Below, piece by piece: positions 6,210 through 51,065 of a DNA stretch of 64,000 nt (positions within the stretch are counted from its first letter, which is position 1; every line of letters begins with the position of its first letter). The position numbers and the translations under genes are program-made. The notes beneath the pieces were generated by a model that did no database searches, was not told the origin of the DNA, and saw only the letters and a program-made list of their open reading frames with translations. The DNA lies in the IMG/VR virus record IMGVR_UViG_3300005337_000441, positions 151,769 through 215,768 of that record, one strand, 5' to 3'.

Positions 6210-7850
6210 ATGCCCCACATTTCTGTAACTCTCCCTGAATCGGAGCAGGCGATTGGTCGCCCGGTGATCTTCGGGATCATTGATCAAATTCAGGACGTGT
6301 GCAAGATCGACAAGAGTGCGAAGATCTACTTTCCCGGTCCGACGGGCAAGATGCAGACGTCCGGCAGTGACATTGACGGTCAAGAACAAGACCGCTTTGC
6401 CACATTCGAAAACCAACGCATTGTCTTCATCGACGTGGATGAGGACTTCGACCGCAACACGCTGGGCTCGACGTCCGTGACCCGTGAAGAGTACGCGCCC
6501 GTCTTCGAGGATGCTGCTCTTGGCGTGCAGGTGTGTCCTGTCTACGCCACGAGTCAAGTGAGCATCCAGGTGCGCTACCGCACGCCTTCGGAGACCGAAG
6601 CCCAGCGCTGGCGTGACGACATGCGCATGCGCATCAGTCAGATGCGTGACACCAACCTGCACAAAGTCAAGTACCACTACAGTCTGCCGCAAACGGTCTG
6701 TCAGGTGATCGAGCACGTCTACGACAAGCGTGAAGCCGTGGCCGGTTACGGTGAAGACCTGGGTGTGTACTTCAAGGGACATGCCACCGAGCGGCTCACG
6801 TTGATCACGGACCAGGTTGGCAAGAACGTGCAGTTTGTGGTTGGTGAGAACCAAGGTCGCATCATCGGGCAGTTTGAGCTCGATGCGATTCCCCAGAAAC
6901 CCACGCGGGATGCCACACACGGTGTCTGGGAAGTCTCTTTCACCTACAAGTTCAACTACGAGCGCCCCGTGGGCGTGACCATGCACTACCCCGTGCAGGT
7001 CCACAACCAGCTGTTGGATCCAATGTTCGTGGCCTTCACGGACAAGCCGATCGATCCGTCGAGCTACCCCAAGAGCTTCTCCAAGTCGTTGTCTGCTCTG
7101 AATGCATTCGAGATGGACTCGATGATGAACGCAGCGGGCAATCCCGATCCGTTCATTCGGATGCCGCGCTACGATGACTTCAAGATCCCTCAGGTGCCTC
7201 AGGGCACGGGCACAGCCTGGCTGGCTCTGATCGAAGTGGGTGAGGACAAGAAGGAGCTCTTCAACCTGGCTGAGATGGGTGACATTGTCATGGACGCCGA
7301 CGTGATGAAGTTCATCCGTGAAGTCGAATGGCAGTACATCACCAAGCAGTTCAAGAGCATTCTGCACTTGACGCTGTATCGCAACGGCAACCAGCTCTCC
7401 ACTGGTCATCTGCAATGCGACGCTCAACTCAACGTCACCTCACGTGACGAGTTGGACTTGCGCAATCAGCACCGGGTGCGCATGGGTATCTACGTGGACC
7501 TGACACTTCTGCCCAAGGAAGCGATGGAGCGGCTGTGTCAATACCCCAAGGCCTTTGTGAAAATCATGCGGGCTATGAACTATCTGCTGAGGATCCATCC
7601 GGACTTCGGCAGCCTGGGCGACAAGAACCGCATCACGCCGCTGGAGTTCAGTGACGTCTACGCAGTCCTCACGGGCTACGGTTACAACAACGGTGTGCGG
7701 GGTCGCAATCCCGCCATGTTCAACGGCAGGCCTGATCAGTACCCGCTCTTCAAGAGCATCGATCCCCGGGTGCGGCAGGCTTATCAAGAGACGATGATCC
7801 GTCTGAAGACTTTGATGTCCGGCTACATCGTAGCCTATCAGGGCAATTGA
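6210..7850 (+). CDS. Virion structural protein (gp98-like)
   Basis: 546 aa; YPVQVHNQLL, WEVSFTYKFNYERP; late-type ATCCTATG upstream. Confidence 0.55.
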   Translation: MPHISVTLPESEQAIGRPVIFGIIDQIQDVCKIDKSAKIYFPGPTGKMQTSGSDIDGQEQDRFATFENQRIVFIDVDEDFDRNTLGSTSVTREEYAPVFEDAALGVQVCPVYATSQVSIQVRYRTPSETEAQRWRDDMRMRISQMRDTNLHKVKYHYSLPQTVCQVIEHVYDKREAVAGYGEDLGVYFKGHATERLTLITDQVGKNVQFVVGENQGRIIGQFELDAIPQKPTRDATHGVWEVSFTYKFNYERPVGVTMHYPVQVHNQLLDPMFVAFTDKPIDPSSYPKSFSKSLSALNAFEMDSMMNAAGNPDPFIRMPRYDDFKIPQVPQGTGTAWLALIEVGEDKKELFNLAEMGDIVMDADVMKFIREVEWQYITKQFKSILHLTLYRNGNQLSTGHLQCDAQLNVTSRDELDLRNQHRVRMGIYVDLTLLPKEAMERLCQYPKAFVKIMRAMNYLLRIHPDFGSLGDKNRITPLEFSDVYAVLTGYGYNNGVRGRNPAMFNGRPDQYPLFKSIDPRVRQAYQETMIRLKTLMSGYIVAYQGN

Positions 7851-38508: not shown

Positions 38509-38673
38509 GGTGATACCTTTAGGCTGTTATCTTTTGAGGCAACAAGCTCAGGTGGATCTGGAGTCCATCAAGAGGGTGCCGCATGTCTTCCCGCATGGGA
38601 ACCACAACATAAGTTCGACCTTCTTTTTTCTATAGGGGTTGAGCCAGAAGTTCGATTATATGAAGGGATCACG

Positions 38674-39275: not shown

Positions 39276-41441
39276 ATGCCTCAATTGTCTTTCATCAAGA
39301 CGGCACGCTCGGGCCAAACCGCCCAGGACATCCAGAGCAACAAGCTGATCTCGGGCCTGCGTGAGCAAGTCGAAGGCGGCAAGATCGTCACGACCGCCGT
39401 GGCGCGCTCGATGATCTCGATGGAAAGCCTGTCCGACACCGCGTTCCACGAGCTGGACAACGCCGGCGGCAAGCTGCAGACCGCGCTGGAATCGATCAGC
39501 ACGAACCTGTTCGGCCAGGACTACAAGCCCACGCACGCTCAGCGCGACGCCGCCGTGATGGCTGGCCTGATGGCCGGTGACTTCGTCGGCACCCTGAAGC
39601 GCAAGCACACGGTGGACCAGGTGTCCAACGAGTCGCTGCAAGTGATCGGTTCGGCCAACGTGTCGGGCGCCCTGTCCGAGCGCAGCTTCGGCCTGGAAGC
39701 CTACGACGAGCGCGAAAACCGCAACGCCGTGGTCTACTCGATCGCCTACAACTACCAGGCCAGCCGCCAGGACGAGTTCGGCGAGACGCTGTTCCCGACG
39801 ATCACCCTGACGAACGAAAACGTCGGCTTCGGCATCACCGTCAACCTGATGATGGTCTACGACGCGATCGAGCGCAAGATCTCCGGCGCCGTGACGGACT
39901 TCAACAAGAAGAACATCATCCGCGCCGTCGCTGACCCGACGATCCTGAAGAAGGACCAGACCAAGGTCGTGCCCGTGTGGCGCACCGAGAGCCAGGCCAA
40001 CTTCTCCACGACCATCCCGCACGGCGCCGTCGTCCTGGAAGGCGAGTCCATCGACACCGCTCCTCTGGCCTTCGGCAAGAAGATCGACCTGCTGGGCCTG
40101 AGCCAGACCGACGCTCTGCTGAGCACCGGCGTGATGAACCAGACCGACAGCCTGGACCCGGCCGTCAACCTGGCTGCCGTGTACCTGACGCTCGCCAACG
40201 ACGTCATCAAGGTCAACACGAAGGACCTGGCCTACAGCAACTTCGTGGCCTCGCCGCAGGACAACTACCGCCTGCAAGCGCTGACCTTCCGCACCACCGG
40301 CATCATCCTGAACAAGGACACCACGAACCTGGACGGCACCCCGCTGACCGACCTGGCTCTGCTGGCCTCGGCTGACCTGGTCGTGCACCTGGAAATGGTC
40401 GTCAACGGCACCGTCAACATCGAAACCGGTGAACTGCAGGTCTACGGCAACCGTGTCGCGGCCTTCAAGGTCTTCGACGCCGCCACCGGCAACGAACTCG
40501 ACACCACCGTCGCGGGCAACGCCAAGACCGTGGCCGACGCCATCGCCGCCGGCGAGCTGGACAGCTTCGACCTGCTGGCCTACCGCACCAACATGAACCG
40601 CCGTCAGCTGGGCCAGCTGATCGACGTGACGAAGTTCACCCAGCTGTACAACGTGCCGCTGCGTTCGCCGATCACCTCGATGCACCCCATCAACAACGAC
40701 GGCTCGACCGACGCTTCCGACGTGCAAGCGCTGATCGCCACGACCCGCATCCGCATGAGCAACGACGCCGTCGCCGCTCTGATCTCCACCATGGAGACGC
40801 TGAGCGCTGTCGTCGACGGTCGCGTGCCTGCCGACAACGGTGGTGCCCTCACCGCCATCGGCCGCTACTACGTGGTTCCCGCCTACATGGGCGACCACAT
40901 CGACATGAACACCGCCATCGACTCCATCAAGTCGCATGAGCGTGCTGCCGACATCCAGGCCGTGCTGGTCAACCACATCCGCGACATGGCCTACCGCCTG
41001 TACCGCGACTCCGAGTACAAGGCTGCGGCCGACGCTCTGAGCGGTGGCATCAGCAAGGTTCCGACCGTCATCGTCGCCACCGACCCGGTGATCGCCCGCT
41101 ACATCAACGTGGAAGGCGAACTGCGCACGCTGTCCGGCGGCTTCGACATCCGTCTGGTCTCCACCCTGGACCGCCGCGTCCAAGGCAAGATCTTCGTGAC
41201 CTTCGGCGTGTTCGACGAGACCCGCAACGTCGCTCCGAACCCGCTGAACTTCGGCAACATGGTCTGGGCGCCGGAACTGGTGCTGTCGGCCAACATCAGC
41301 CGCAGCGGCACGAGCAAGGAAACCGTGGTCCAGCCGCGTTACCTCTTCGTGAACCACCTGCCCATCGGCGGCGTGATCACCGTGGAGAACATCCCGGCCG
41401 TGCTGAACAGCGTCGTCATCGACGTCAAGGTCACCCCGTAA
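39276..41441 (+). CDS. Major capsid protein precursor (phiKZ gp120-like)
   Basis: 721 aa; propeptide with SME/ALE/GLE sites; YNYQASRQDEFGETLFPT; LNFG; QPRYLFVNHLP; extreme codon bias. Confidence 0.92.
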   Translation: MPQLSFIKTARSGQTAQDIQSNKLISGLREQVEGGKIVTTAVARSMISMESLSDTAFHELDNAGGKLQTALESISTNLFGQDYKPTHAQRDAAVMAGLMAGDFVGTLKRKHTVDQVSNESLQVIGSANVSGALSERSFGLEAYDERENRNAVVYSIAYNYQASRQDEFGETLFPTITLTNENVGFGITVNLMMVYDAIERKISGAVTDFNKKNIIRAVADPTILKKDQTKVVPVWRTESQANFSTTIPHGAVVLEGESIDTAPLAFGKKIDLLGLSQTDALLSTGVMNQTDSLDPAVNLAAVYLTLANDVIKVNTKDLAYSNFVASPQDNYRLQALTFRTTGIILNKDTTNLDGTPLTDLALLASADLVVHLEMVVNGTVNIETGELQVYGNRVAAFKVFDAATGNELDTTVAGNAKTVADAIAAGELDSFDLLAYRTNMNRRQLGQLIDVTKFTQLYNVPLRSPITSMHPINNDGSTDASDVQALIATTRIRMSNDAVAALISTMETLSAVVDGRVPADNGGALTAIGRYYVVPAYMGDHIDMNTAIDSIKSHERAADIQAVLVNHIRDMAYRLYRDSEYKAAADALSGGISKVPTVIVATDPVIARYINVEGELRTLSGGFDIRLVSTLDRRVQGKIFVTFGVFDETRNVAPNPLNFGNMVWAPELVLSANISRSGTSKETVVQPRYLFVNHLPIGGVITVENIPAVLNSVVIDVKVTP

Positions 41442-41478
41442 GGACCACTAGCCCTCAGCAATGGGGGCACACCAACCA

Positions 41479-41518
41479 GGAGACGGGGCCTTCGGGCTCC
41501 GTCTCTTTTTATGCCGTC
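41479..41518 (+). terminator. MCP terminator with TATGCCGTC box
   Basis: gagacggggcc-ttcg-ggctccgtctc then tttttatgccgtc; near copy of the 6136 hairpin. Confidence 0.85.
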
Positions 41519-41535
41519 TCGATAAAAGTTCGGGA

Positions 41536-41544
41536 ACATATACT
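41536..41544 (+). promoter_or_regulatory. Putative early promoter core ACATATACT
   Basis: Exact motif at the start of the accessory block. Confidence 0.65.
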
Positions 41545-41571
41545 TTATTTGAGATACAACAAGGAACAACC

Positions 41572-42000
41572 ATGAACACTGAAAGCAACATTGGCATTAT
41601 CGCCAAAGCCATTTACGCATTGGCCTACGAGCTGACCACGTGGATGAAGTTCGAAAGCCCCAAGTCCAAGAAGTTCCGCTTCGACGTGGATATCAAGTAC
41701 GAGGGTGATACACGTGAACTGCGCATCGAGCGTGATGAACAGGACACCTTCACGTTCTCTCTCTTCAACGACTCCATTGAGGTGTCCTTACGACGAGGAC
41801 GTCACGCCAGTGATACGAACGTGGTACGACAGCCTCGCTTCACTCTGATGATGTATCGCCCGACGGACGACACCGCTGTCCCGCGCTTAGCGATTCCGAA
41901 TAAGCCTGAAGAGGTGTTCCCGGACAACGTCTTCCCGTTCTTACACGTGTATGACGTGTTGGAGACTTGTGCGAAGGAAGCTCATCGTTTCCAAGTCTGA
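41572..42000 (+). CDS. Hypothetical protein (paralog pair A)
   Basis: AAGGA SD; IAKAIYALAYELTTWMKFESP...PEEVFPDN. Confidence 0.6.
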   Translation: MNTESNIGIIAKAIYALAYELTTWMKFESPKSKKFRFDVDIKYEGDTRELRIERDEQDTFTFSLFNDSIEVSLRRGRHASDTNVVRQPRFTLMMYRPTDDTAVPRLAIPNKPEEVFPDNVFPFLHVYDVLETCAKEAHRFQV

Positions 42001-42010
42001 AAGAACAACC

Positions 42011-42421
42011 ATGCCCATCGAACCCGGCATCGAGCTGATCGCCGCTGAACTTTATGCCATCGGCTACGAGATCACGGCGTGGATCCACTTCACCGCTCCT
42101 GATGAGAGCTACAAGCGCTACCGCTTGCCGCTCGTGCACGACGGTGAGGAATGTGAGCTGCACATCACTGCGGACTACAACAGCAACATCTCCTTCGAGC
42201 TGCAACCCTTGATGCGAGTACGTGGCCTCAACCTGAGTGAACCCACGCCCAATCAAGCGGTGCCGATCAAGCGGCGCTGGATCATCTTGACCAAACCCAA
42301 GCTCAACGACAGGATGCCTGGAATCAGCGATCCTTCGTACCCGAGCGAAACATTCCCTGCCAACTACGTGCTGACGTTCTTGCAAGGATTGAAAGCCCAC
42401 GCCGTGCAGTACCACACCTGA
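42011..42421 (+). CDS. Hypothetical protein (paralog pair A)
   Basis: IAAELYAIGYEITAWIHFTAP...PSETFPAN. Confidence 0.6.
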   Translation: MPIEPGIELIAAELYAIGYEITAWIHFTAPDESYKRYRLPLVHDGEECELHITADYNSNISFELQPLMRVRGLNLSEPTPNQAVPIKRRWIILTKPKLNDRMPGISDPSYPSETFPANYVLTFLQGLKAHAVQYHT

Positions 42422-42430
42422 GGGAACAAC

Positions 42431-42868
42431 ATGCATGCACCTGACACCCCGCATGCAGAGCATGACCCTGTGCTCAAGCATGAGAACTTCGAAACGCTGT
42501 ACGCTGAGGCCCGAAAGCTCCTGCAGCGTGTATTGCCATCGGACATGAGCACCAACATCGTGATACTGGAAGATTTCCAACTGGAGATCAACGGTCGCAT
42601 GGTGCCCTTCGTGCTGCGTTTGACAGATCACACGAAGTACCTGTCGAACATGATCTACGTGCAGATCAATCCCACTCGCACTCTGTACTCAACCAGGTGG
42701 CACTTTGCGCTGTATGAGCACGGACAACTCGTCAGCGGAGGTGCGGCCGTCGTTCATGCTGGCACCCAAGCGTGGCAACAGGAACACGCCCGCAGTCCCG
42801 AGATCGCCAAGATCGCCGCAGACTACCTCGCATCTCAAAACAAGGAAAGTCATGTACCGCAGATGTGA
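42431..42868 (+). CDS. Hypothetical protein (paralog pair B)
   Basis: DPVLKHENFETLY...RWHF...HARSPEIAKIAADYLA. Confidence 0.6.
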   Translation: MHAPDTPHAEHDPVLKHENFETLYAEARKLLQRVLPSDMSTNIVILEDFQLEINGRMVPFVLRLTDHTKYLSNMIYVQINPTRTLYSTRWHFALYEHGQLVSGGAAVVHAGTQAWQQEHARSPEIAKIAADYLASQNKESHVPQM

Positions 42869-43127
42869 AATCTGTGACGGACTGGAAGACCTGGACCATA
42901 AACCCCACTGCCGTTTCTTTGGCAAGCCGGTGACGGGTCACGAGCTCAAGTCCGAAGCAGAGTCGAACCCTGAACTCGAACGTCGAGCCGCCTTGAAGAT
43001 GGTTCACTTCTTGGCACGTCACAACCATCTCGAATCCCCCATGGGCCGTCAGGCTCAAGCCTGGGTGGAATCTACAACCAAGGTCATTCAAGGAGAAAAA
43101 GATGACCATCATCCTCGCAAGCAGTGA
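42852..43127 (+). CDS. Small protein with possible Zn-binding N-terminus
   Basis: AAGGA SD, ATG 42852; CEICDG...DHKPHC. Confidence 0.5.
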   Translation: MYRRCEICDGLEDLDHKPHCRFFGKPVTGHELKSEAESNPELERRAALKMVHFLARHNHLESPMGRQAQAWVESTTKVIQGEKDDHHPRKQ

Positions 43128-44064
43128 GCCGGATCCGGCACTGCAACATGAGAACTTCCAGAAGCTCTACGACGTGGCGCTGAGTGCAGCGCAGTCAGCT
43201 CCTTTCATCGAGAAGTCTCAAACTCGGGAGCAGACGTACAAGAGCTGCGCCTTGGTGATGAAGGGTGAGGTCGTCAAGTACAACATCCAGCTCAAGCTCT
43301 ATCCGCAGATCGGACAGCTGGAAGTCGAGGTGACTGACGACTTCATGTTCGGCGATCGGTGGCACTTTGGCTTCCATCGTGACCTGCCTGGAGAAGTGGT
43401 CGGCGGCTACTCGTCACAAGACCCATGCTCGGACACACATCGTCAAATGCATGCTCTCAGCGCCGAGCTCGCCAAGTGCGTCACAGACTTCCTCGCTCAA
43501 CTCAACCAAGAAGGACAATCTGTCGTGAGTCAAGAAAAAGAAGTATTCCATCCGGTCTGCATTCCGCCGCAGTTCAACTGGGGCGAGACCTACTTGGATC
43601 TGTTCTACGTGGTGTCGCACATGTTGCGGCCGTTCGGTGAGTACTTCGGGCCCGCCTACGGCAACGTGGTGAAGCTCAAGATGCACGCCAATGCAGTCTT
43701 GCCGCTGGACAACCACAACACCAAGACGGCCGAGACGGTCAAGTTCTCACCGGACCCCCACGCCCACGGTTCGGCCCGTGACTTCAAGGTCACGCTGGGT
43801 AGCCACTTGCGGGACTTCCCTAAGCACAGCCTGCACCATGTCTTCTCGGTCTATGAGAACGACAACGAGACCTGGAGCTACCAGTTCTCGATCGGCCTGA
43901 ACACGTACGGTCGCGTGGAGTTCACGAGCTTCTACGCGGCGCATCCGAAGTTCATGGAGGAAGTCGGCGGCGTGAATGAGGCACGCATCTGGTTTGACCG
44001 CATGGTGTTGCAGTGCCTGGGCATGTTGCGGGCTTACAAGAGCCAGCCGAGTTTGGAGGAATAA
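43102..44064 (+). CDS. Hypothetical protein (pair B domain plus extra domain)
   Basis: DPALQHENFQKLY...RWHF...HALSAELAKCVTDFLA. Confidence 0.6.
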   Translation: MTIILASSEPDPALQHENFQKLYDVALSAAQSAPFIEKSQTREQTYKSCALVMKGEVVKYNIQLKLYPQIGQLEVEVTDDFMFGDRWHFGFHRDLPGEVVGGYSSQDPCSDTHRQMHALSAELAKCVTDFLAQLNQEGQSVVSQEKEVFHPVCIPPQFNWGETYLDLFYVVSHMLRPFGEYFGPAYGNVVKLKMHANAVLPLDNHNTKTAETVKFSPDPHAHGSARDFKVTLGSHLRDFPKHSLHHVFSVYENDNETWSYQFSIGLNTYGRVEFTSFYAAHPKFMEEVGGVNEARIWFDRMVLQCLGMLRAYKSQPSLEE

Positions 44065-44069
44065 TTGCC

Positions 44070-44546
44070 ATGAGTCACATGTCCGCAAATCCAGTTCCTT
44101 TGCAGTACCGTTCCCTGCGTAGTGTCTGGCGCGCTGTACGGCACCCAGGTCTGGCTGACGCGGGCACGCAGTACACACTCCAGCAGCTCTATGAGCAGTT
44201 CAGCGCCAAGCTGACGGAGCTGAACTGCAACGGTGTGACCTACGTGGATCAGGTCTACTTCTATGGTCAACGCATGGATCTCTTTGGACACCGTGATCTG
44301 AACGGCGAGCATGCCGATCAGCTGCTGGTGACGCTGGCGCACACTTCGTTGCGTGACGCCACACTCACGTGGATGTTGCAGTTCACTGTGAACAAAGAAA
44401 ACATCGGCACGGTACAGCAGCGCTACGTTATTTCGCCGCTGTATCTGGGCGACGGAGTGACCGAGTTGCCCTACCAGTACGCGCTCACGGTGCTGGGCTC
44501 CATCATCGACACCGTCAAGACGTGTCGTCCATCCAACCCTCGATAA
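44070..44546 (+). CDS. Hypothetical protein
   Basis: GGAGG SD, ATG 44070. Confidence 0.55.
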   Translation: MSHMSANPVPLQYRSLRSVWRAVRHPGLADAGTQYTLQQLYEQFSAKLTELNCNGVTYVDQVYFYGQRMDLFGHRDLNGEHADQLLVTLAHTSLRDATLTWMLQFTVNKENIGTVQQRYVISPLYLGDGVTELPYQYALTVLGSIIDTVKTCRPSNPR

Positions 44547-44552
44547 ATCAAC

Positions 44553-45035
44553 ATGACCAACTACGAATTGATGTTAACGGTCAACTACCGGCTGGCTTAC
44601 CCCGAGGACACGGTGGCCAATCGCAAGATCTTCATCTCCCAGACGGTCTTCAAGTTCCTGGGCTTCCATCATGCGCGCACGCACTGGAAGCTTGGCACCA
44701 AGGCGCTGGAGATCTGCCACATGCTCAACATGCGCAGTCTGACCACTGCGGTCAAGACGGGCTTCTTCGGCGAGGACTTCAGCACACTGTCGCTGATGTT
44801 GCAGACACCTTTCTTCAAGGAGCGTCTGGCAGAAGTTGAGCTCGCTGACATCGAGAAGATCCAGTGGAAAGTCGACGACATCTTGCTGCCCACGGAAGGC
44901 CTGCTGTGGCAAGGTCAGGTGGTACCCGAGATGCGCGTGGATCGGGGAACCTGGATCAAGGTCATGGACTCCGTCATCAATTTTGCCAAGGTGGACACCG
45001 AGGCGGGAAAGGAAGCAAAGGTAGGATACCTATGA
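44553..45035 (+). CDS. Hypothetical protein
   Basis: ORF packing and codon bias. Confidence 0.55.
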   Translation: MTNYELMLTVNYRLAYPEDTVANRKIFISQTVFKFLGFHHARTHWKLGTKALEICHMLNMRSLTTAVKTGFFGEDFSTLSLMLQTPFFKERLAEVELADIEKIQWKVDDILLPTEGLLWQGQVVPEMRVDRGTWIKVMDSVINFAKVDTEAGKEAKVGYL

Positions 45036-45592
45036 GCAACTCACAACAATTGCTGCACTTCGATCACATGTACAACATCGGGGAGATCTTCCCCGGCAAG
45101 ACCGTGAAGGATTTCACCGGTCCGCAGTTGCGTGTGGGGGAGATTCACGTCCGTGACGGCAACGACGTCAGGGTCATCAAAAACCTGGTCACGCAGTTCA
45201 ACCCGAAAATGGTGATGACGGCTCACGGTCACATGCCGGTGGCAGGGTACGTGGATATGAAGGTGTCCAATCCCCGTCACCCTGATCTGGCCAATCTGCC
45301 GGACACGCCTGCCCTGGAAGGCGAGCTGTGCTCCAACGAAGACGGCACATTGGTGCTGTATTCGCGCAGCAACAAGAACCTCGTGGGCTTCAAGCTCGCC
45401 GCCATGTTGCCCGTGGATCCGGCTGAAGAAATCGCCGAGGCCCGTCATGAGCTGCGTCGGTACTTCACGCCCGACCAATACGACGAGGCACTTTTCCGAC
45501 AGTTCGACAACGACTACGGTCTCTTCAAGCCTGAGGCGCGTCGCCGCATCGAAGAACTCAGGAAGATCCTCAACAAAGTTCCCCGTTCGTGA
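45032..45592 (+). CDS. Hypothetical protein
   Basis: ATGA overlap, AGGA SD. Confidence 0.55.
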   Translation: MSNSQQLLHFDHMYNIGEIFPGKTVKDFTGPQLRVGEIHVRDGNDVRVIKNLVTQFNPKMVMTAHGHMPVAGYVDMKVSNPRHPDLANLPDTPALEGELCSNEDGTLVLYSRSNKNLVGFKLAAMLPVDPAEEIAEARHELRRYFTPDQYDEALFRQFDNDYGLFKPEARRRIEELRKILNKVPRS

Positions 45593-45623
45593 AGAGAGGA
45601 CCTTCGGGTCCTCTTTTTTTTTT
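45592..45623 (+). terminator. Intrinsic terminator
   Basis: agaggacc-ttcg-ggtcctct then a long T tract. Confidence 0.85.
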
Positions 45624-45647
45624 GTCTCCTTAGAAGGAATTTGGGTC

Positions 45648-45656
45648 ACATATACT
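45648..45656 (+). promoter_or_regulatory. Putative early promoter core ACATATACT
   Basis: Exact motif directly after a terminator. Confidence 0.65.
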
Positions 45657-45698
45657 GTTCTTGACATTGATCCCCTTTTCAATACTAGGAATACCAAC

Positions 45699-46283
45699 AT
45701 GAATCAACGAACCAACTACATGAAGATGTCTCAAGAGGAACTGTGGACTTTGCACGGCCTGTGCATGGATCACCTGGCTACCTCGACGGGACTTCCGATG
45801 CTGTATACGTTCCACATGTCGGTGGAACAGGACACCAAGATGATCCAGTGGGCTGTGGTGATCGAGCGCTCCTCGGAGAACAACGAACACACCACGTATG
45901 AGGACACTGTCATCCGCATCACACTCACCCATGAAAAGGGTGAGAACATCTGTGTCAGAGAGATGCACTTCACCAGCTTCAAGCTCCTGCGCACATCCAT
46001 GGACTGGGTCAAGAAGGGTGAAGCTCTGCACGACGAGGAGAGCAAAGGAAGAGTCTCCTCCAACCGCATGGAAGGCGTGATCCCGCACCTTCTCCAACAT
46101 GTTCTCGCCGCCCTTCGTGATCGCCGACCCGACACGAAAGACGAGCTCAAGCTCATGATGGCGCGTGTGCCCACTGCACAGACACTCATGCACCGTCTCG
46201 AACACATCCTGAACACCGACCATCCGGCACTGACCCGTGAAGTGCGTCAGTTCTTGGACCGTCACATCCTCGACCCGAAGTAA
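45699..46283 (+). CDS. Hypothetical protein
   Basis: AGGA SD, ATG 45699. Confidence 0.55.
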   Translation: MNQRTNYMKMSQEELWTLHGLCMDHLATSTGLPMLYTFHMSVEQDTKMIQWAVVIERSSENNEHTTYEDTVIRITLTHEKGENICVREMHFTSFKLLRTSMDWVKKGEALHDEESKGRVSSNRMEGVIPHLLQHVLAALRDRRPDTKDELKLMMARVPTAQTLMHRLEHILNTDHPALTREVRQFLDRHILDPK

Positions 46284-46291
46284 ACCTCAAC

Positions 46292-46327
46292 GAGCCCCCG
46301 CTATGCCAGGCGGGGGCTTATGCCGTC
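46292..46327 (+). terminator. Hairpin with TATGCCGTC box and no U tract
   Basis: gagcccccgcc-type stem, then TATGCCGTC. Confidence 0.6.
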
Positions 46328-46351
46328 AACACTACCAATAGGAGTACCACC

Positions 46352-46948
46352 ATGGCAAACGAAAAGATGCCTTTCCTTCTGAAAACGATTTCCGACCTGC
46401 TACCGGGCGGCGTGGACAATACACGCTATCCGGTCGCTGTCACCTACAACCCGGATCCCGAGAAGTGGGAGATCCGTGAAATACCTCTGCTCATTGCGCT
46501 CAGCAAGAAGCACGAGGACACCCTGCGTCTGGCTCGTCGTGCAGACCACGCCAGCTACTGCGACAAGAAGTTCACCTATAACGGCCAGGACTACTTGCTG
46601 CGCAAACAGCATCTCCCGTCCAAACACAGGGAATGGGACGACATCAGTCTGCGGGCCGAAGACGAGTACATGCGGCTGTCCTTCATGTCGCCTCATGCGC
46701 CGGATGGTCAGTATGCCTGGTGGATGCACTGCATCATCCCGGGCATGAACAACATTGGTCAGAAGAACTACAACTACGTGAACTACGTTGTCCCCAAAGA
46801 CAACTTGCCTTTCCCCATTGAAGAATGGGACCAGTTCCTCGCAGCGCTGGACGCCATGCTGCGAACGTGTTTCACCGAAGAGAAACTCAAGGAGATTTTG
46901 TCCCATGAGCGATCGAACCCATTCGGCGGTAAACCTTTCCCCAACTAA
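46352..46948 (+). CDS. Hypothetical protein
   Basis: AGGAG SD, 198 aa. Confidence 0.6.
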   Translation: MANEKMPFLLKTISDLLPGGVDNTRYPVAVTYNPDPEKWEIREIPLLIALSKKHEDTLRLARRADHASYCDKKFTYNGQDYLLRKQHLPSKHREWDDISLRAEDEYMRLSFMSPHAPDGQYAWWMHCIIPGMNNIGQKNYNYVNYVVPKDNLPFPIEEWDQFLAALDAMLRTCFTEEKLKEILSHERSNPFGGKPFPN

Positions 46949-47495
46949 GCTGCCGATCAGTTGCACTCTGGATCCCACTCTCGTGGCCTACCACGAAGTG
47001 GACCTGGCAGCCTACGCCGATCTCGACCCCGAACACACCTCACACCTGGCCAACCAGTTGGCTGTCGTGGCGGAGTTCAACGGAGGGCTGGATCCGAACG
47101 TGCACAAGACGTTCATCCATGTTCCTTCCGAACACCTCGTCACGTTTGAAGAAAAGGGCAAGGACCCCGCGTCTGATGCTCGCTACTTCAAGGTGACGGT
47201 GACACCCCTGAAGAACCCCGACCGCTGGGGTAAATGGTGGTTTCATCTTCGGCAGCGCGAGCATCGCCAAGGTGACATCATCAGCATGTGTCAGGCCTTC
47301 ACGAAAGACCCCATCTCAGAAGTACTGCTCACGCAGCTGCTGATTCAGATGGGTCGCATCGTGGAAGTCTGGGCATTGGCGCATCAACGCCAGTGCGAGC
47401 AGACCTACCTGAAGGATCCATTCAGTCCGGGGAAACCTGAACATGAATGGCTGCAACACAAGCATCTGGAAGACTCGCCGATTCGCCGGAAGTAA
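46905..47495 (+). CDS. Hypothetical protein
   Basis: AAGGAG SD before ATG 46905. Confidence 0.55.
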   Translation: MSDRTHSAVNLSPTKLPISCTLDPTLVAYHEVDLAAYADLDPEHTSHLANQLAVVAEFNGGLDPNVHKTFIHVPSEHLVTFEEKGKDPASDARYFKVTVTPLKNPDRWGKWWFHLRQREHRQGDIISMCQAFTKDPISEVLLTQLLIQMGRIVEVWALAHQRQCEQTYLKDPFSPGKPEHEWLQHKHLEDSPIRRK

Positions 47496-47560
47496 AAATA
47501 ACGGTAGGTGGGATTATCTATTGAGATCCCATCTATCCGTTCAACCCTGGAGAGTCAGAA

Positions 47561-48613
47561 ATGGCGACCGCAAAAAAGACAGCAGCCAAGAAGGTTGCTG
47601 CCAAAACAACCAAGCCGTCAGCAGCGGCCAAGACGACCGACAAAAAGAAGGTCGTGAAGGATCCTGGCGTCGAGGCTGACAAGCCTGTTGTGGCCAAGAA
47701 GGCTGCGGCGAAGAAGACACTCGACAAGGCGTCTCCTGCTGTCGCGACCGGTAAGAAGTCTGCCACGGCCAAAAAGGAACCGACCAAGAAGAAGGTCGCC
47801 GCCAAGACGCCGGCTTCCACGGGTCTGACTGGCGATGCTTCGCCGCCGGTGGCGCATGTCGTGAGCCGCAACGCCAAGGGTGAGACGGCTGTGGCTGTTT
47901 CTACTCCTATCACGACGGCACCGGTGGCTGCACCGGCTCCCACGCCTGCACCCAAGCCCGCTCGTCCGGTCGTGACGCCGCCGCGCTTTGCACCGAAGCC
48001 CCCGCCGCCGCCTCCCGCTCCTCCCGCGCCGCCCCCGAAGCCGGCGATCAGCTTCGAAGAAGCGACGACCTCGGAGATGAAGAAGGTCAACGTGAAGAAG
48101 TTCCCGCTGGTGCCGCTCTTTGGCGACAGCACGCTTTCGCAGAACAACTTCGCGCGTCCTGCTCCCATCTCGGTGAACATGCCCGACGGCACCACGCAGT
48201 CGGTCAAGAGCGGTTTCCTCGCCTTCAACAAGTCCATCGAACTGCTCGCTCTCACCAGCAGCAACGAATGGATCGAAGCCGGCCATGTCGCAGCGGATGA
48301 CCACATCGGCGACGACATGAAGCTGCTGGCCATCTGCGTGGAACTCGACGGCCAGAACGTGTTCATCCAGGTCAATCCGGACGAGCACCTCTTCAAGCCC
48401 GCCGTGGGCAACGCACGCTTCAGCGTGATCAGCACCGAGATCTCCTACTCGCCTGATCCGACGGCCAGTCCCCGCCGCGTCTTCATCATCAAGGTCGAAG
48501 GCAACGTGGATCTGGACACCGGTCGCGCTTACCTCAGCGCCACCGCCAACCGGCCTGAACTTGCCCCCATGGGCTTCTTCCTGCAAGGCTCGCGCCAAAG
48601 CTACGTGAAGTAA
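47561..48613 (+). CDS. H1-like tail, Pro linker and major-capsid-protein-domain fusion
   Basis: N-terminal MATAKKTAAKKVAAK; poly-Pro linker; aa ~173-350 align by eye with MCP aa ~223-441. Confidence 0.75.
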   Translation: MATAKKTAAKKVAAKTTKPSAAAKTTDKKKVVKDPGVEADKPVVAKKAAAKKTLDKASPAVATGKKSATAKKEPTKKKVAAKTPASTGLTGDASPPVAHVVSRNAKGETAVAVSTPITTAPVAAPAPTPAPKPARPVVTPPRFAPKPPPPPPAPPAPPPKPAISFEEATTSEMKKVNVKKFPLVPLFGDSTLSQNNFARPAPISVNMPDGTTQSVKSGFLAFNKSIELLALTSSNEWIEAGHVAADDHIGDDMKLLAICVELDGQNVFIQVNPDEHLFKPAVGNARFSVISTEISYSPDPTASPRRVFIIKVEGNVDLDTGRAYLSATANRPELAPMGFFLQGSRQSYVK

Positions 48614-48617
48614 ACCT

Positions 48618-48676
48618 CATAGACCTCCAGGTGCCCTTGCAGGCCCTGGAGGTCTATGCTGTCTGCTTTCTTTTTC
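48618..48676 (+). terminator. Terminator hairpin with TATGCTGTC box
   Basis: catagacctccagg / cctggaggtctatg. Confidence 0.7.
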
Positions 48677-48691
48677 TGAAAAATTACAGTC

Positions 48692-48700
48692 ACATATACT
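48692..48700 (+). promoter_or_regulatory. Putative early promoter core ACATATACT
   Basis: Exact motif with A/T-rich upstream segment. Confidence 0.65.
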
Positions 48701-48783
48701 CAACCTGAGAGATACCGCATTGATCTCTCAAGATGATAACCCGACGTCTGGTTGGAGTCATCTATTCTCGTCTGGAGAAACAA

Positions 48784-49095
48784 ATGTCTGCAAGTATTTT
48801 CCCCGTTGGCCATCAAACCACTTGCCAAATGGGCAACATCCACGACAAGCACGGCTTTGTCGCGGAAGCCAAGGTGACCATCCTCGGTCACAAAATCATC
48901 GACCACATGCCCGACCAGCCGCTGTACCTGATCAAGGTCAACGGCGAAGACCGCGTGGGTCGTGCCACCTTGAAGTTGGAAACCGACGACGACATCACGG
49001 CCGAGCTCTACTGCACGGCCAAAGCTTGGTATGGCTCGGCCGCCATCCCGGGCGCAGCTGAATCGTTCGAAGCTGCCGTCAAGCGCCTGTTCTGA
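48784..49095 (+). CDS. Hypothetical protein
   Basis: GGAG SD, ATG 48784. Confidence 0.55.
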   Translation: MSASIFPVGHQTTCQMGNIHDKHGFVAEAKVTILGHKIIDHMPDQPLYLIKVNGEDRVGRATLKLETDDDITAELYCTAKAWYGSAAIPGAAESFEAAVKRLF

Positions 49096-49139
49096 ATTCC
49101 TTTCCCTCCTCCCCAAATACCACCACTAGGAACACCATC

Positions 49140-49616
49140 ATGAAACTCATTCTCACCGCTACCGAAATCGCCTCCAGCGCCAAGCTCGTCACCGGCGTCA
49201 TCCTGCAGATGCCCGGCGAGACCGACTGGGAGCTGATCGACAAGCTGCGCGATCCCAAGGACTTCCTGAAGAAGGTCGTCACCTCGCCCAAGCATGGCTT
49301 CACGGTTACGCTGCCTGACTGCAGCACCCCTGCCAATGAAGAGATGATCGACGCCGAGGACGTGGCCCATCTGCGTCTGGTGATCGAAGTCACCGAAGCC
49401 GAGTACCTGGCCATCAACAAGCTGCTGTCGCGCCACACCGGCACGATCATCAGCCTGGTCAAGATGTACATGTCCTTCGTCGAGCTGATCGGTAGCCTGA
49501 TGAAGACCTTCGTCGACGACATCGGCGAGCTCACCGAGACCACGCTCAAGTTCGGCCAGGACATCGAAGTCGAGAAGGCCGACAGCGGCATCGACAACGC
49601 CGACACTCCGGCCTGA
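49140..49616 (+). CDS. Hypothetical protein
   Basis: AGGA SD, strong codon bias. Confidence 0.6.
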   Translation: MKLILTATEIASSAKLVTGVILQMPGETDWELIDKLRDPKDFLKKVVTSPKHGFTVTLPDCSTPANEEMIDAEDVAHLRLVIEVTEAEYLAINKLLSRHTGTIISLVKMYMSFVELIGSLMKTFVDDIGELTETTLKFGQDIEVEKADSGIDNADTPA

Positions 49617-49657
49617 TACGTTTCCTCCCTCAGCTCTACCTCCCTGGAGCTGCTTCA

Positions 49658-49696
49658 GAGCCGCCTGGACCGAGAAACCCAGGCGGCTCCTTTTTT
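49658..49696 (+). terminator. Intrinsic terminator
   Basis: gagccgcctgg / ccaggcggctc then T6. Confidence 0.75.
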
Positions 49697-49710
49697 ACCG
49701 AGGAAACCTC

Positions 49711-50070
49711 ATGGCCATCCATGCCGAACAAGCCAACCGCAACATGCGGTGGAAGTCTTACAAGCGCTTCACGGCTGCTGAAATTGAAGCACACATTGAC
49801 TGGTGTTTCAGTCGACCCATTCAAGGCTTCTGTCCCTATGAGAAGCCGCCGGTGGGTTACCGCGAAGAACCTCGTTCGCCGTACGAAAACCAGGTGTACT
49901 ACATCGAGCTGTCCAATCCTGGGTATGTGACCAAGCGCGTCGTGGCTCTGCTCAACGCACGCTACCGCCGCGCGGACTGGGAGAGCGTCACGCTCATGCC
50001 CATGGCCATCAACGCCCGTACCCATAACCGCGTCTTGCGTCTGTCGACCAAGTCCGGTCTCTGTCTGTAA
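49711..50070 (+). CDS. Hypothetical protein
   Basis: GAGG SD, 119 aa. Confidence 0.55.
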   Translation: MAIHAEQANRNMRWKSYKRFTAAEIEAHIDWCFSRPIQGFCPYEKPPVGYREEPRSPYENQVYYIELSNPGYVTKRVVALLNARYRRADWESVTLMPMAINARTHNRVLRLSTKSGLCL

Positions 50071-50123
50071 GTCTTCCCCAACCCCCCGTTCCCTCACCAC
50101 CGCTCTCGAAAGGAGTCTTTACC

Positions 50124-50303
50124 ATGGGCCTAGCCCAAACCCACGATCAACCCCTGGTCATCACGAGCTACCACCCCTCGCCCTTCGGTGCGCTGGGTGA
50201 TTGCAAGACCGAAGCCTGGAAACAGGCCGAACGTCAGCGTGCACAGCGGGAGATCTTGGAGCGAGCCACCCGCGAGTGGCGCAACAACCGCTTCAAGAAC
50301 TGA
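50124..50303 (+). CDS. 59-aa small protein absent from the ORF track
   Basis: AAGGAG SD; MGLAQTHDQPLVITSYHPSPFGALGDCKTEAWKQAERQRAQREILERATREWRNNRFKN. Confidence 0.55.
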   Translation: MGLAQTHDQPLVITSYHPSPFGALGDCKTEAWKQAERQRAQREILERATREWRNNRFKN

Positions 50304-50435
50304 TCAGCGAGGCCAACTCGACACGCCTCGAAAACGCTACAACTACACCCCTTTTATGGGGTGTGATCGTCGGCGTTTTTTTTTTGTGGTGACCACACAT
50401 GTTATGTTCCGACACCCTTATTCGGAGTACTCTAC

Positions 50436-51038
50436 ATGTACAAGATTTATACCCAGAAGCCCAAAACCGCAGAGATCAAGGTCAAGGTTGAACTGGGGAC
50501 GTTCAAATTCGGCAAGGTTCCCCGCGCCGTGTTCCTCGGCATCGGCAACAAACCCCAGCGTTATGCCAACTACCTGGCCACGGCTTTCACGGAAGCCGGC
50601 ATCGATGTGCTGCGCCTGCTGGCGCACGTGCATCTGCAAGGCTGTGAGCATGGCGACATGCTGCTCGTGGGGGAGCGCGACAAGCCCTACCACGCCCAAG
50701 TCGTCAAGGAGTTCCTGGAGGCCAACGCCAGCTTCCTGGACACCGTCATTCCTTACCTGTTCCCGGGCAAGAAGACGGCCGCTGAGGGTGCGGAGCCGGC
50801 TGAGTTGCCCGAGGAGCTCAAGGAGAAGTTCGAGCGCGAGAAGATGACGCCGCTGTCCAGCTCCAAAATGACGCTGGCAGACCTGCCGGAAGACGATCGC
50901 AACCAGATCCAGGCGTTGATCGCTGCGGACCAGGCTCGCCAGGCGGAAGAAGCTGCCAAGCCCATCCCGATCACGCTGAGCGAACTGCCTCTGGCTGGCG
51001 AGAGCGCGCAGCCTGAGACCAACGAAGCATCTTCTTGA
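50436..51038 (+). CDS. Hypothetical protein
   Basis: GGAG SD, 200 aa, acidic C-terminus. Confidence 0.6.
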   Translation: MYKIYTQKPKTAEIKVKVELGTFKFGKVPRAVFLGIGNKPQRYANYLATAFTEAGIDVLRLLAHVHLQGCEHGDMLLVGERDKPYHAQVVKEFLEANASFLDTVIPYLFPGKKTAAEGAEPAELPEELKEKFEREKMTPLSSSKMTLADLPEDDRNQIQALIAADQARQAEEAAKPIPITLSELPLAGESAQPETNEASS

Positions 51039-51065
51039 ACTCAACTAGGTAGGGAACAGCACAAC

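What the first reader, a model, noticed from the sequence alone, without database searches (positions are those of the whole stretch)
47561..48613. Stand-alone copy of the major capsid protein's central domain fused to a histone-H1-like tail
Seen: aa ~173-350 align colinearly with MCP aa ~223-441 (about 39942-40598). PLVPLFGDSTLSQNNF vs KVVPVWRTESQANF; SVKSGFLAFNKSIELLALTSSNEWIEAGHVAADDHIGDDMKLLAICVEL vs SIDTAPLAFGKKIDLLGLSQTDALLSTGVMNQTDSLDPAVNLAAVYLTL; IKVEGNVDLDTGRAYL vs MVVNGTVNIETGELQV; ELAPMGFFLQGSRQS vs ELDSFDLLAYRTN. The first ~85 aa are Lys/Ala-rich (AKKTAAKKVAAK) and a PAP/PPPPPP linker precedes the capsid-like domain. The gene sits among accessory genes 6 kb downstream of MCP and lacks the MCP N- and C-terminal regions. 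Inference: a DNA- or nucleus-tethered capsid mimic. It could be a decoy for capsid-triggered immunity, an adaptor for capsid docking, or an assembly regulator.
Basis: partly seen in the sequence, partly recalled or inferred. Interest (0 to 1): 0.85.

Follow-up and report, generated by a model that had tools for sequence, protein, structure and literature searches.

The report
Free-standing capsid insertion domain with basic tail
An uncultured soil jumbo phage carries a real, conserved gene that joins a copy of the outer "insertion" domain of its own major capsid protein to a long lysine-rich tail; similar unstudied free copies of this domain occur in well-known laboratory phages, so their function can now be tested.

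Summary
ORF 47561-48613 (+, 350 aa) is a real gene with a ribosome-binding site, its own terminator hairpin and dN/dS 0.15. Residues 182-350 are homologous to residues 230-442 of the window's phiKZ-type major capsid protein (MCP). The pairwise match is marginal (BLASTP E 3e-4), but the profile-profile match is decisive (99.2%, E 1.4e-19). This segment is the MCP "I domain", an E-loop insertion on the outer capsid surface. An AlphaFold model (pLDDT 96) matches only jumbo-phage MCPs in the PDB.

Residues 1-162 are a disordered polycationic Lys/Ala/Thr region (net +21 over 1-173) followed by a proline-rich spacer. It resembles histone H1 in composition only.

Eight proteins with this tail-plus-I-domain architecture form one clade in related uncultured phages, always between the MCP and ribonucleotide reductase genes. 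Other free I-domain proteins exist in cultured phages (201phi2-1 gp106, FLC9 gp87, and fold matches in RP12, Phabio and PhiPA3). None has been studied.

Function is not shown. My best guess (0.35) is an MCP-co-regulated accessory protein that docks on MCP or the capsid through I-domain contacts and presents a polyanion-binding arm. Decoy, assembly regulator and dimeric DNA-condensing protein remain live rivals.

The parts
47514..47525 (+). Promoter-like motif TTATCTATTGAG, 36 nt upstream of the ATG
   Evidence: The pattern TAT[CT][CT]?[TA][AT]TTGA[AG] occurs only twice in the 64-kb window (0.09 expected). The other site, at 38528, heads the 185-aa/MCP operon. L008 has its single site in the equivalent intergenic region, and L003 has one upstream of its family gene. 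The motif was derived after seeing the data, and its function is inferred.
47549..47554 (+). Ribosome-binding site GGAGAG
   Evidence: Read directly from the sequence.
47561..48613 (+). Coding sequence, 350 aa: polycationic tail, proline-rich spacer, MCP I domain
   Evidence: ORF list. A 96%-identical orthologue comes from an independent assembly, with dN/dS 0.15. Eight homologues share the architecture.
47561..47815 (+). aa 1-85: Lys/Ala/Thr-rich polycationic segment (25 K+R, 22 A, pI 10.4)
   Evidence: Composition. Single-sequence AlphaFold gives pLDDT near 40 and no secondary structure. Only sub-threshold matches to H1-like families. dN/dS for the tail (aa 1-173) is 0.33.
47921..48046 (+). 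aa 121-162: proline-rich spacer (22 P of 42, includes PPPPPP)
   Evidence: The equivalent region in homologues varies in length and sequence.
48047..48103 (+). aa 163-181: short acidic/basic junction with a candidate prohead-protease site, S-F-E166
   Evidence: A [SAG]-x-E motif lies just upstream of the domain in 3 of 4 independent lineages. The MCP maturation site aligns as G-L-E141|A142. This is weak and compatible with chance.
48104..48610 (+). aa 182-350: stand-alone I (insertion) domain, mostly beta strands
   Evidence: hhalign 99.2%, E 1.4e-19 to MCP 230-442. AlphaFold pLDDT 95.8, pTM 0.89. Foldseek against the PDB returns only jumbo-phage MCPs, with query TM-score 0.69-0.70. dN/dS 0.06.
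48618..48658 (+). Terminator hairpin, followed by CTATGCTGTC and a T-rich tract
   Evidence: RNA fold -33.6 kcal/mol, z -6.5. The same hairpin-plus-motif layout ends other genes in the window. The simple terminator scan did not flag it.
39276..41441 (+). Major capsid protein (phiKZ gp120 type), the homologous (probable parent) gene
   Evidence: Pfam PF25620 E 3e-174. PDB relatives 11bt, 36za, 8y6v and 8bfl.
39963..40601 (+). MCP aa 230-442: the I domain homologous to the stand-alone protein
   Evidence: hhalign. Alignment to phiKZ gp120 places it within gp120 residues 248-472, which PMC11297242 defines as the I domain.
38528..38538 (+). Second copy of the promoter-like motif (TATCTTTTGAG), upstream of the 185-aa/MCP operon

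Best explanation
The gene encodes an accessory protein, made together with the major capsid protein, with three parts.

1. The C-terminal 170 residues are a free copy of the MCP I domain. In the capsid this domain sits on a neighbouring subunit and pairs with another I domain across capsomers.
2. The first 85 residues are a flexible polycationic arm (net charge +21 over aa 1-173).
3. A stiff proline-rich spacer (aa 121-162) lies between the arm and the domain.

The proposed mechanism is as follows. The I domain uses MCP-type I-domain contacts to dock on MCP, capsomers or the (pro)capsid surface. Possible contacts are I-I pairing, or the I-domain seat on the A/P junction. Candidate sites are those where a partner is missing, such as unassembled capsomers or the five unpaired I domains around the portal vertex. 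Docking would place a polyanion-binding arm there. DNA is the most likely ligand; an acidic protein surface is the alternative.

Shown: the gene is real and under purifying selection; the I-domain homology and fold; the composition of the tail and its conservation across the clade; conserved synteny; a cis motif shared with the MCP operon.

Inferred: co-expression with MCP, binding to the capsid, binding to DNA, and any effect on assembly or packaging.
For: Homology and fold of the I domain:
- hhalign 99.2%, E 1.4e-19.
- Relatives score above the Pfam cut-off.
- AlphaFold pLDDT 95.8; the only PDB matches are jumbo-phage MCPs.
- The I domain's role in intra- and inter-capsomer contacts is described in PMC11297242.

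The gene is functional:
- dN/dS is 0.06 for the domain and 0.33 for the tail.
- It has an RBS, its own terminator and an upstream motif.

Links to the MCP:
- The gene lies directly after the MCP gene in L008 and 6-7.6 kb downstream in the window and L004, in the same orientation.
- TTATCT(A/T)TTGAG occurs only upstream of this gene and of the MCP operon in the window, and in the equivalent MCP-operon intergenic region of L008.
- Codon adaptation of the I-domain part (0.76) exceeds that of most neighbouring accessory genes (0.45-0.68; one reaches 0.82).

The tail is a conserved feature:
- All 8 clade members keep a tail of net charge +10 to +22 and pI about 10, despite little sequence identity, while their I domains are acidic.

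Modularity of the I domain:
- Other lineages attach different extensions to the same domain: FLC9 gp87 has a C-terminal extension and P0006 a different N-terminus. This fits the I domain acting as a shared targeting module.
Against: - No binding, localisation or virion data exist for any member.
- In a finished lattice every I-domain site is already filled by the MCP's own tethered I domain. Free sites are therefore few or transient.
- The searches of the phiKZ and Goslar capsid papers found no mention of a separate I-domain protein.
- 201phi2-1 gp106, a tail-less relative, carries no virion mass-spectrometry flag in its record and sits beside the nuclear-shell gene, not the MCP.
- The protein evolves faster than the surface it would bind: 31-34% identity against 51-56% for MCP I domains of the same phages. 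It also lacks two MCP I-domain segments of about 17 and 28 aa.
- Close MCP relatives L020-L025 show no copy within the sequence held downstream of their MCP genes (up to 10 kb; shorter in some loci).
- The shared motif was defined after seeing the data, and its function is unknown.
Confidence: 0.35

Rival explanations
1. Capsid-surface mimic (decoy or competitor). A soluble I domain that cannot assemble occupies host or rival-phage factors that recognise the exposed MCP surface, for example capsid-sensing defence proteins. It would blunt an immune trigger or interfere with a competitor.
For: - The gene lies in a variable island of small orphan genes between the MCP and RNR genes. The closest cultured phage, FLC9, lacks the whole island.
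- It diverges fast relative to the MCP and has a patchy distribution.
- In the 272-kb phage of L006, two tail-less copies sit within about 1.4 kb of an Acb2/Tad1-hairpin (anti-defence sponge-like) gene.
- 201phi2-1 gp106 is not flagged as a virion protein.
Against: - The copy is only 26-30% identical to its own MCP I domain and lacks two surface segments, which makes it a poor mimic of sequence-specific epitopes.
- This reading does not explain the conserved polycationic tail.
- No defence system is known to sense this domain, and the literature search found no precedent for a capsid-domain decoy.
- The motif shared with the MCP operon is neutral for this reading.
Confidence: 0.22
2. Histone-like DNA-condensing protein. 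The I domain has been reused only as a dimerisation module through the I-I pairing surface, and two basic tails bridge or condense phage DNA. This would act before or during packaging, or inside the head.
For: - A basic disordered tail joined to an oligomerisation domain is the usual layout of bacterial H1-like and H-NS-like proteins (general knowledge).
- MCP I domains do form dimers in the capsid.
- The tail is conserved in charge across the clade.
- A candidate prohead-protease motif lies between tail and domain, as would suit a head-internal protein.
- The best, though sub-threshold, match of the tail is the Burkholderia H1-like DNA-binding protein family.
Against: - Matches to H1-like families are far below their cut-offs.
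- Relatives without a tail (201phi2-1 gp106, L047, L006b) or with other extensions (FLC9 gp87) show that the domain has a role of its own.
- Self-association has not been tested.
- The I domain lies on the outside of the shell, so targeting to the interior has no obvious route.
Confidence: 0.2
3. Assembly chaperone or regulator. The free I domain caps the vacant I-domain seat or the pairing surface of unassembled MCP or capsomers. This would delay or direct shell polymerisation, and the protein would leave before maturation.
For: - It shares the MCP-linked evidence of the main explanation.
- Vacant seats exist only on unassembled subunits, which removes the 'no free site' objection (inference).
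- Absence from virions would be expected, in line with the gp106 record.
Against: - The protein is not universal among phiKZ-like phages, and close MCP relatives show no copy in the held flanks, so it cannot be an essential chaperone.
- The role of the tail is unexplained.
- Fast evolution is unusual for a partner of a conserved assembly interface.
Confidence: 0.15
4. A decaying remnant of a partial MCP duplication with no function of its own.
For: The low pairwise identity to the MCP and the loss of two internal segments.
Against: - The reading frame is intact and the domain has dN/dS 0.06.
- The architecture is conserved in 8 proteins across phages whose MCPs differ by 33-42%.
- The gene has its own expression signals.
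- The fold is predicted with high confidence.
Confidence: 0.02

Closest known systems
I (insertion) domain of phiKZ-type major capsid proteins (phiKZ gp120 residues 248-472, PDB 8Y6V; PhiKp24, PDB 8BFL; Pfam PF25620)
   Same: Homologous over the whole domain (hhalign 99.2%). The predicted fold matches (query TM-score about 0.70). The N- and C-terminal strands lie next to each other, as expected for an inserted domain.
   Different: It is not embedded in an HK97 fold: there is no N-arm, P domain, A domain or I-domain linker. It is about 45 residues shorter because two segments are missing. It is 26-30% identical to its own MCP I domain and acidic, and it is fused to a 170-residue basic, proline-rich N-terminal region.
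Other stand-alone I-domain proteins of phiKZ-like phages, all annotated hypothetical: 201phi2-1 gp106; Burkholderia phage FLC9 gp87; fold matches in RP12 (229 aa), Phabio (315 aa), PhiPA3 protein 326 and pEt-SU; PHROG 36436
   Same: Each is a free copy of the same domain. gp106 has HMM E 1.9e-14 and hhalign 98.9%. FLC9 gp87 scores 58 bits on Pfam PhiKZ_MCP. The others are Foldseek matches with query TM-score 0.52-0.75.
   Different: gp106 has no tail and FLC9 gp87 has a C-terminal extension instead; the other fold matches were not inspected for tails. gp106 sits next to the nuclear-shell gene, and FLC9 gp87 after the RNA-polymerase-like genes. Sequence identity to the window protein is about 15-20%. 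Whether all share one origin is unresolved: a single clade is not rejected by the AU test, p 0.48.
Bacterial histone H1-like DNA-binding proteins (Chlamydia Hc2, PF07382; Burkholderia type, NF038053)
   Same: A Lys/Ala-rich, low-complexity, strongly basic segment with (A/T)KK repeats.
   Different: The scores are far below the family cut-offs (14 bits against 40, and 16.7 against 80). The resemblance is compositional, and DNA binding is untested.
MCP paralogues and capsid decoration or cement proteins of other phages, such as the T4 gp24 vertex protein, T4 Hoc/Soc and lambda gpD (from general knowledge)
   Same: A capsid-gene-derived or capsid-binding accessory protein encoded in or near the head module.
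   Different: T4 gp24 is a full-length MCP paralogue that builds pentons, whereas only the insertion domain is copied here. Known decoration proteins are not derived from the MCP's own insertion domain. Binding to the capsid has not been shown here.

Membership tests
PhiKZ-type MCP I-domain homologues (segment of Pfam PF25620) | Significant sequence or profile similarity to the I-domain segment | tested here: met
   hhalign 99.2%, E 1.4e-19, 165 aligned columns. The family HMM hits all 67 MCPs at this segment. Relatives score 33-50 bits against the 27-bit cut-off. The window protein alone scores 17 bits, which is below the cut-off.
PhiKZ-type MCP I-domain homologues (segment of Pfam PF25620) | I-domain fold | tested here: met
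   AlphaFold pLDDT 95.8, pTM 0.89. Foldseek against the PDB returns only jumbo-phage MCPs at E <= 1e-3, with query TM-score 0.69-0.70. Caveat: 44 of the 55 alignment rows were MCP I domains, so the model is not independent of the homology claim. The single-sequence model failed.
Major capsid protein (HK97 fold, shell-forming) | N-arm, P domain and A domain of the HK97 fold | tested here: not met
   The matches cover only MCP 230-442. Nothing in the protein aligns to MCP 1-229 or 443-721. It cannot be a shell subunit.
Histone H1-like DNA-binding proteins (PF07382 HC2; NF038053, NF038052) | Score above the curated family cut-off | tested here: not met
   HC2: E 0.054, 14 bits against 40. hist_H1_lk_Burk: E 0.0067, 16.7 bits against 80.
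Histone H1-like DNA-binding proteins (PF07382 HC2; NF038053, NF038052) | Non-specific DNA binding by the Lys/Ala-rich region | not testable with these tools
   Only composition can be shown: net +21 and pI 10.3 over aa 1-173.
Phage head decoration or cement proteins | Presence on the virion and binding to the assembled capsid lattice | not testable with these tools
   The phage is uncultured (rhizosphere metagenome). The only indirect datum is that the tail-less relative 201phi2-1 gp106 lacks a virion mass-spectrometry flag in its record.
phiKZ-like internal head proteins (PF12699) | Match to the phiKZ_IP profile | tested here: not met
   The target has no such hit, whereas three paralogues elsewhere in the window do.
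Anti-defence proteins | Match to a known anti-defence family, or an experimentally shown counter-defence activity | not tested
   Pfam, PHROGs and NCBIfam gave no anti-defence hit. PADLOC was not run because it holds defence models, not anti-defence models. The only hint is the neighbourhood of the distant paralogues in L006, next to an Acb2_Tad1_hairpin gene.

The most novel reading that the evidence does not exclude
phiKZ-like jumbo phages have released the outer insertion domain of their capsid protein as separate genes, possibly more than once, and use it as a soluble stand-in for the capsid surface. In this clade the copy carries a DNA-binding arm. It would then act either as a decoy against capsid-sensing immunity or as a tether that couples capsids, perhaps at the portal vertex, to phage DNA for packaging.
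Probability: 0.2. Interest if true: 0.85.

Novelty: new variant of a known kind. Interest (0 to 1): 0.62.

Why it matters
The I domain forms most of the outer face of phiKZ-type capsids and holds capsomers together. A free, selected copy of it implies that something in the infected cell needs or reads this surface apart from the shell. That something could be assembly, packaging, trafficking or host immunity.

I found no paper that describes such proteins. Yet homologues exist in tractable model phages: 201phi2-1 gp106 lies right beside the nuclear-shell gene, and Burkholderia phage FLC9 has gp87 (PhiPA3 protein 326 is a further fold-level match). The question can therefore be tested directly by tagging, deletion and pull-down. 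The tail-bearing form found here would additionally link a capsid module to a nucleic-acid-binding arm, an architecture that none of the library or literature searches here found described.

Tried and rejected
- **GenBank phages:** nucleotide and tblastn searches with the gene found nothing.
- **Word-indexed protein search:** it found only the 98%-identical orthologue.
- **Single-sequence AlphaFold:** uninformative, pLDDT 39.
- **Locus scans with family alignments:** Two ran with subfamily patterns and found no relatives in IMG/VR or JGI metagenomes.
- **ESM Atlas:** only noise, with a best score of 0.64 (cofilin) and structural TM-scores near 0.2.
- **Literature:** searches for capsid decoys, MCP paralogues, 201phi2-1 gp106 and PhiPA3 gp326 gave nothing relevant. 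The single 'gp106' hit refers to a different PhiPA3 protein.
- **RP31:** its fold-level homologue is not within about 24 kb downstream of the MCP gene.
- **Simple terminator scan:** it missed the real hairpin because the T tract is offset; folding showed it.
- **Antisense ORFs:** the 300- and 326-aa ORFs over the same region were rejected as by-products of the GC-rich sequence, because conservation and dN/dS support the + frame.
- **Independent origins:** I first read the tree as showing several independent duplications. The AU test does not reject a single origin (p 0.48), so I dropped that claim.
- **Prohead-protease site:** the [SAG]-x-E motif is present in 3 of 4 lineages, which is compatible with chance, so it stays a weak hint.
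- **RNA runs:** the single run search (kind 'any') listed only one DNA run and none with RNA; a dedicated RNA search was not run, so expression could not be checked.
Full report
**1. The gene is real**

The window comes from a 215.8-kb IMG/VR contig (UViG 3300005337_000441) of a rhizosphere metagenome. It is a phiKZ-like jumbo phage. It carries:
- a phiKZ-type MCP at 39276-41441 (Pfam PF25620, E 3e-174);
- three phiKZ_IP internal-head paralogues;
- a head-tail joining protein, a divergent DnaB, ThyA and RNR;
- an RNA-polymerase beta-like gene.

No GenBank phage is close. The best MCP match is Burkholderia phage FLC9 at 44% identity.

ORF 47561-48613 (+, 350 aa) has GGAGAG 7 nt before the ATG. 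A -33.6 kcal/mol hairpin (z -6.5) follows the stop codon. An independent assembly (Logan SRR31724269, locus L001) is colinear over 7.2 kb at 95% nucleotide identity and encodes a 96%-identical orthologue. Between the two copies, dN/dS is 0.15 overall, 0.33 for the tail (aa 1-173) and 0.06 for the C-terminal domain. The long antisense ORFs over the same region are by-products of the GC-rich sequence.

**2. The similarity to the MCP is genuine homology and covers one defined domain**

Pairwise BLASTP finds only aa 191-272 against MCP 237-314 (30% identity, E 3e-4). The protein's own Pfam and PHROG hits to the MCP families are sub-threshold.

An exhaustive phmmer search of 1.84 billion representatives with aa 160-350 found five further relatives. 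A profile search added three more. Three of the relatives score above the Pfam PhiKZ_MCP cut-off, at 33-50 bits against 27.

Profile-profile comparison of 10 family sequences with 13 MCPs gives 99.2% probability and E 1.4e-19. The family HMM hits this same segment in all 67 distinct MCPs examined.

Aligning the window MCP to phiKZ gp120 (PDB 8Y6V) and using the published domain limits identifies the segment. Those limits are: N-arm 164-204, I-domain linkers 205-247 and 473-484, I domain 248-472, then the P and A domains (PMC11297242). The segment is the I (insertion) domain. This is an elaboration of the HK97 E-loop on the outer capsid surface. It sits on the A/P junction of the neighbouring subunit and forms I-domain dimers across quasi-two-fold axes. 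The stand-alone copy spans the domain from its first to its last conserved motif (FPLVPL ... GFFLQGSR, matching KVVPVW ... LLAYRTN). It lacks two internal MCP segments of about 17 and 28 residues.

An AlphaFold model of aa 174-350 has pLDDT 95.8 and pTM 0.89 and is mostly beta strands. It was built on 55 aligned sequences, of which 11 are stand-alone proteins and 44 are MCP I domains. In the PDB it matches only jumbo-phage MCPs: PhiKp24 8BFL and phiKZ 8Y6V at query TM-score 0.69-0.70, and phage S6 weakly. Because the alignment contains MCP sequences, the model is not independent proof of homology.

**3. The N-terminal half**

- Residues 1-85 hold 25 Lys+Arg and 22 Ala, with pI 10.4.
- Residues 121-162 hold 22 prolines out of 42.
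- Residues 1-173 carry a net charge of +21.
- The I-domain part is acidic, with pI 5.2-5.9 depending on where the boundary is drawn (aa 163 or 174).

The single-sequence model predicts no structure in this half. Matches to H1-like families are far below their cut-offs: HC2 scores 14 bits against 40, and the Burkholderia H1-like family 16.7 against 80. 'Histone-H1-like' therefore describes composition, not membership.

**4. A family with a conserved architecture and position**

Eight proteins (window, P0001, P0003, P0004, P0005, P0009, P0010, P0011) start with MAT-x-KK. Each carries a basic tail of 59-173 residues (net +10 to +22, pI about 10) and ends in the I domain. P0002, a 142-residue fragment holding only the domain, groups with them.

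On a tree of I domains the eight tree rows of this group (seven tailed proteins plus the fragment P0002; P0001 was not included) form one clade with SH-aLRT 99. The clade sits on a long branch outside all MCP I domains.

Where context is available, the gene order is: divergent DnaB (-), a 185-aa gene, MCP, a variable run of small orphan genes, this gene, a few more small genes, RNR large and small subunits, then three conserved genes that include an RNA-polymerase beta-like one. The gene lies 150 bp after the MCP gene in L008, 7.6 kb after it in L004 and 6.1 kb after it in the window. FLC9 lacks the whole island.

The three phages whose context is known have MCPs 58-67% identical and MCP I domains 51-56% identical. 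Their stand-alone domains are only 31-34% identical to one another, and 26-30% identical to their own MCP I domain. The gene is therefore retained but evolves fast.

**5. A wider, undescribed class**

Foldseek against predicted viral structures finds small 'uncharacterized' proteins with this fold in cultured phiKZ-like phages. They include RP12 (229 aa), Phabio (315 and 149 aa), 201phi2-1 (188 and 150 aa), pEt-SU, Psa21, PhiPA3 protein 326, PhiEaH1 and FBKp24.

I confirmed two by sequence:
- **201phi2-1 gp106** (188 aa) is encoded directly after the nuclear-shell protein gp105 and before an RNA-polymerase subunit. It is an I-domain homologue (HMM E 1.9e-14; hhalign 98.9%). Its GenBank note carries no mass-spectrometry virion flag, unlike many other genes in the same record.
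- **FLC9 gp87** and six IMG/VR relatives carry the I domain at the N-terminus plus a C-terminal extension of about 160 residues with no known family.

Further forms:
- L047 has a bare 192-aa copy that is 43% identical to its own MCP I domain.
- A 272-kb JGI phage (L006) has two tail-less copies within about 1.4 kb of an Acb2/Tad1-hairpin gene.

The tree suggests more than one origin. However, an AU test does not reject a single clade of all stand-alone copies (p 0.48), so the number of origins is open. The searches of the phiKZ and Goslar capsid papers and of the held literature found no mention of such proteins.

**6. Expression signals**

Three promoter-like motif classes recur in the window:
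- GTATCYTATGA precedes structural genes at 6210, 8366 and 9797.
- CACATATACT has 4 exact and 3 one-mismatch sites, all on the + strand. Six of the seven lie shortly upstream of genes. These are accessory genes and the gene ahead of the polymerase-like gene, and one site lies directly after the target's terminator.
- TTATCT(A/T)TTGAG occurs only twice in 64 kb (0.09 expected): upstream of the target gene and at the head of the 185-aa/MCP operon. In L008 its only copy lies in the equivalent MCP-operon intergenic region. L003 has it upstream of its family gene, and L004 and L002 have near matches.

The third motif was defined after seeing the data. Even so, its placement suggests co-regulation with the MCP. 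Codon adaptation of the I-domain part (0.76) is below that of the MCP (0.89) but above most neighbouring accessory genes (0.45-0.68; one reaches 0.82).

**7. What it most likely does**

Shown: a selected, separately expressed protein that combines a free MCP I domain with a polycationic, extended arm.

Inferred: the I domain keeps doing what it does in the shell, which is binding MCP surfaces or another I domain. It would thereby place the arm on MCP, capsomers or the (pro)capsid. The arm would bind a polyanion, most plausibly DNA. Free docking sites should exist on unassembled capsomers. They should also exist around the portal vertex, where the missing penton leaves five I domains unpaired (my inference from the published lattice).

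I give this explanation 0.35. The rivals are:
- a soluble mimic of the capsid surface acting as a decoy or competitor (0.22);
- a dimeric histone-like DNA condenser that uses the I domain only to dimerise (0.20);
- a transient assembly regulator (0.15);
- a decaying remnant (0.02, contradicted by the selection data).

The candidate prohead-protease motif S-F-E166 is noted but is statistically weak. The homologous MCP maturation site is G-L-E141|A142.

**8. Verdict**

The finding is a new architecture within a broader class of free I-domain proteins that I found no paper describing. Members of that class in model phages make the question experimentally accessible.

Noticed in passing
window 7890, 28625, 41535, 45647, 48691, 54927 (and intragenic 52860): The motif CACATATACT has 4 exact and 3 one-mismatch sites, all on the + strand. 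Six of the seven lie shortly upstream of genes, mostly accessory genes. The same motif follows the family gene's terminator in L008 and L003. It is probably a phage promoter class.
   Followed up: partly
window 6182, 8334, 9765: GTATCYTATGA, which contains TATG, lies upstream of three structural genes: a 546-aa gene, an internal head protein and the head-tail joining protein. It is a second promoter-like class.
   Followed up: partly
window 9735, 14966, 28541, 41508, 46317, 61578: (C/T)TTATGCCGTC directly follows GC-rich terminator hairpins. It appears to be a conserved element of this phage's terminators.
   Followed up: no
window 41461-51040; L004 2513-13709; L008 9852-12542; L009 16190-16620: The interval between the MCP gene and the RNR/polymerase-like genes is a hypervariable island. 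FLC9 has no genes there and also lacks RNR at this site. L008 has 5 genes there. The window has about 19, nearly all orphans.
   Followed up: partly
L081 7728-8294 (Pseudomonas phage 201phi2-1 gp106): A stand-alone I-domain homologue is encoded between the nuclear-shell protein gp105 and the RNA-polymerase subunit gp107. It is annotated hypothetical and has no virion mass-spectrometry flag.
   Followed up: partly
L006 10001-12514 (JGI 3300038443 contig, 272 kb): Two tail-less I-domain paralogues (260 and 208 aa) lie within about 1.4 kb upstream of a gene with an Acb2/Tad1 hairpin domain, a fold known from anti-CBASS and anti-Thoeris sponge proteins.
   Followed up: no
L009 22214-23359 (Burkholderia phage FLC9 gp87); L037, L034, L035, L040, L046, L067: A subfamily carries the I domain at the N-terminus plus a C-terminal extension of about 160 aa with no Pfam or PHROG match. 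It is encoded after the three conserved genes that follow the MCP.
   Followed up: partly
L058 3942-5363: The MCP reading frame breaks off after about 474 aa in this IMG/VR contig. In the GenBank search, Xanthomonas phage RTH11 showed two MCP matches in one record. These may be interrupted (intron or endonuclease) MCP genes or further paralogues.
   Followed up: no
window 18395-20320 and 25309-27291: A 641-aa protein has many weak hits to tail-fibre, decoration and peptidase PHROGs, suggesting a repeat-rich structure. A 660-aa protein contains an FG-GAP repeat.
   Followed up: no
window aa 276 of the target (His in NPDEH) and the equivalent column in all tailed members: A histidine is invariant in the tailed clade and is not conserved in MCP I domains. 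It may mark a clade-specific functional site.
   Followed up: no
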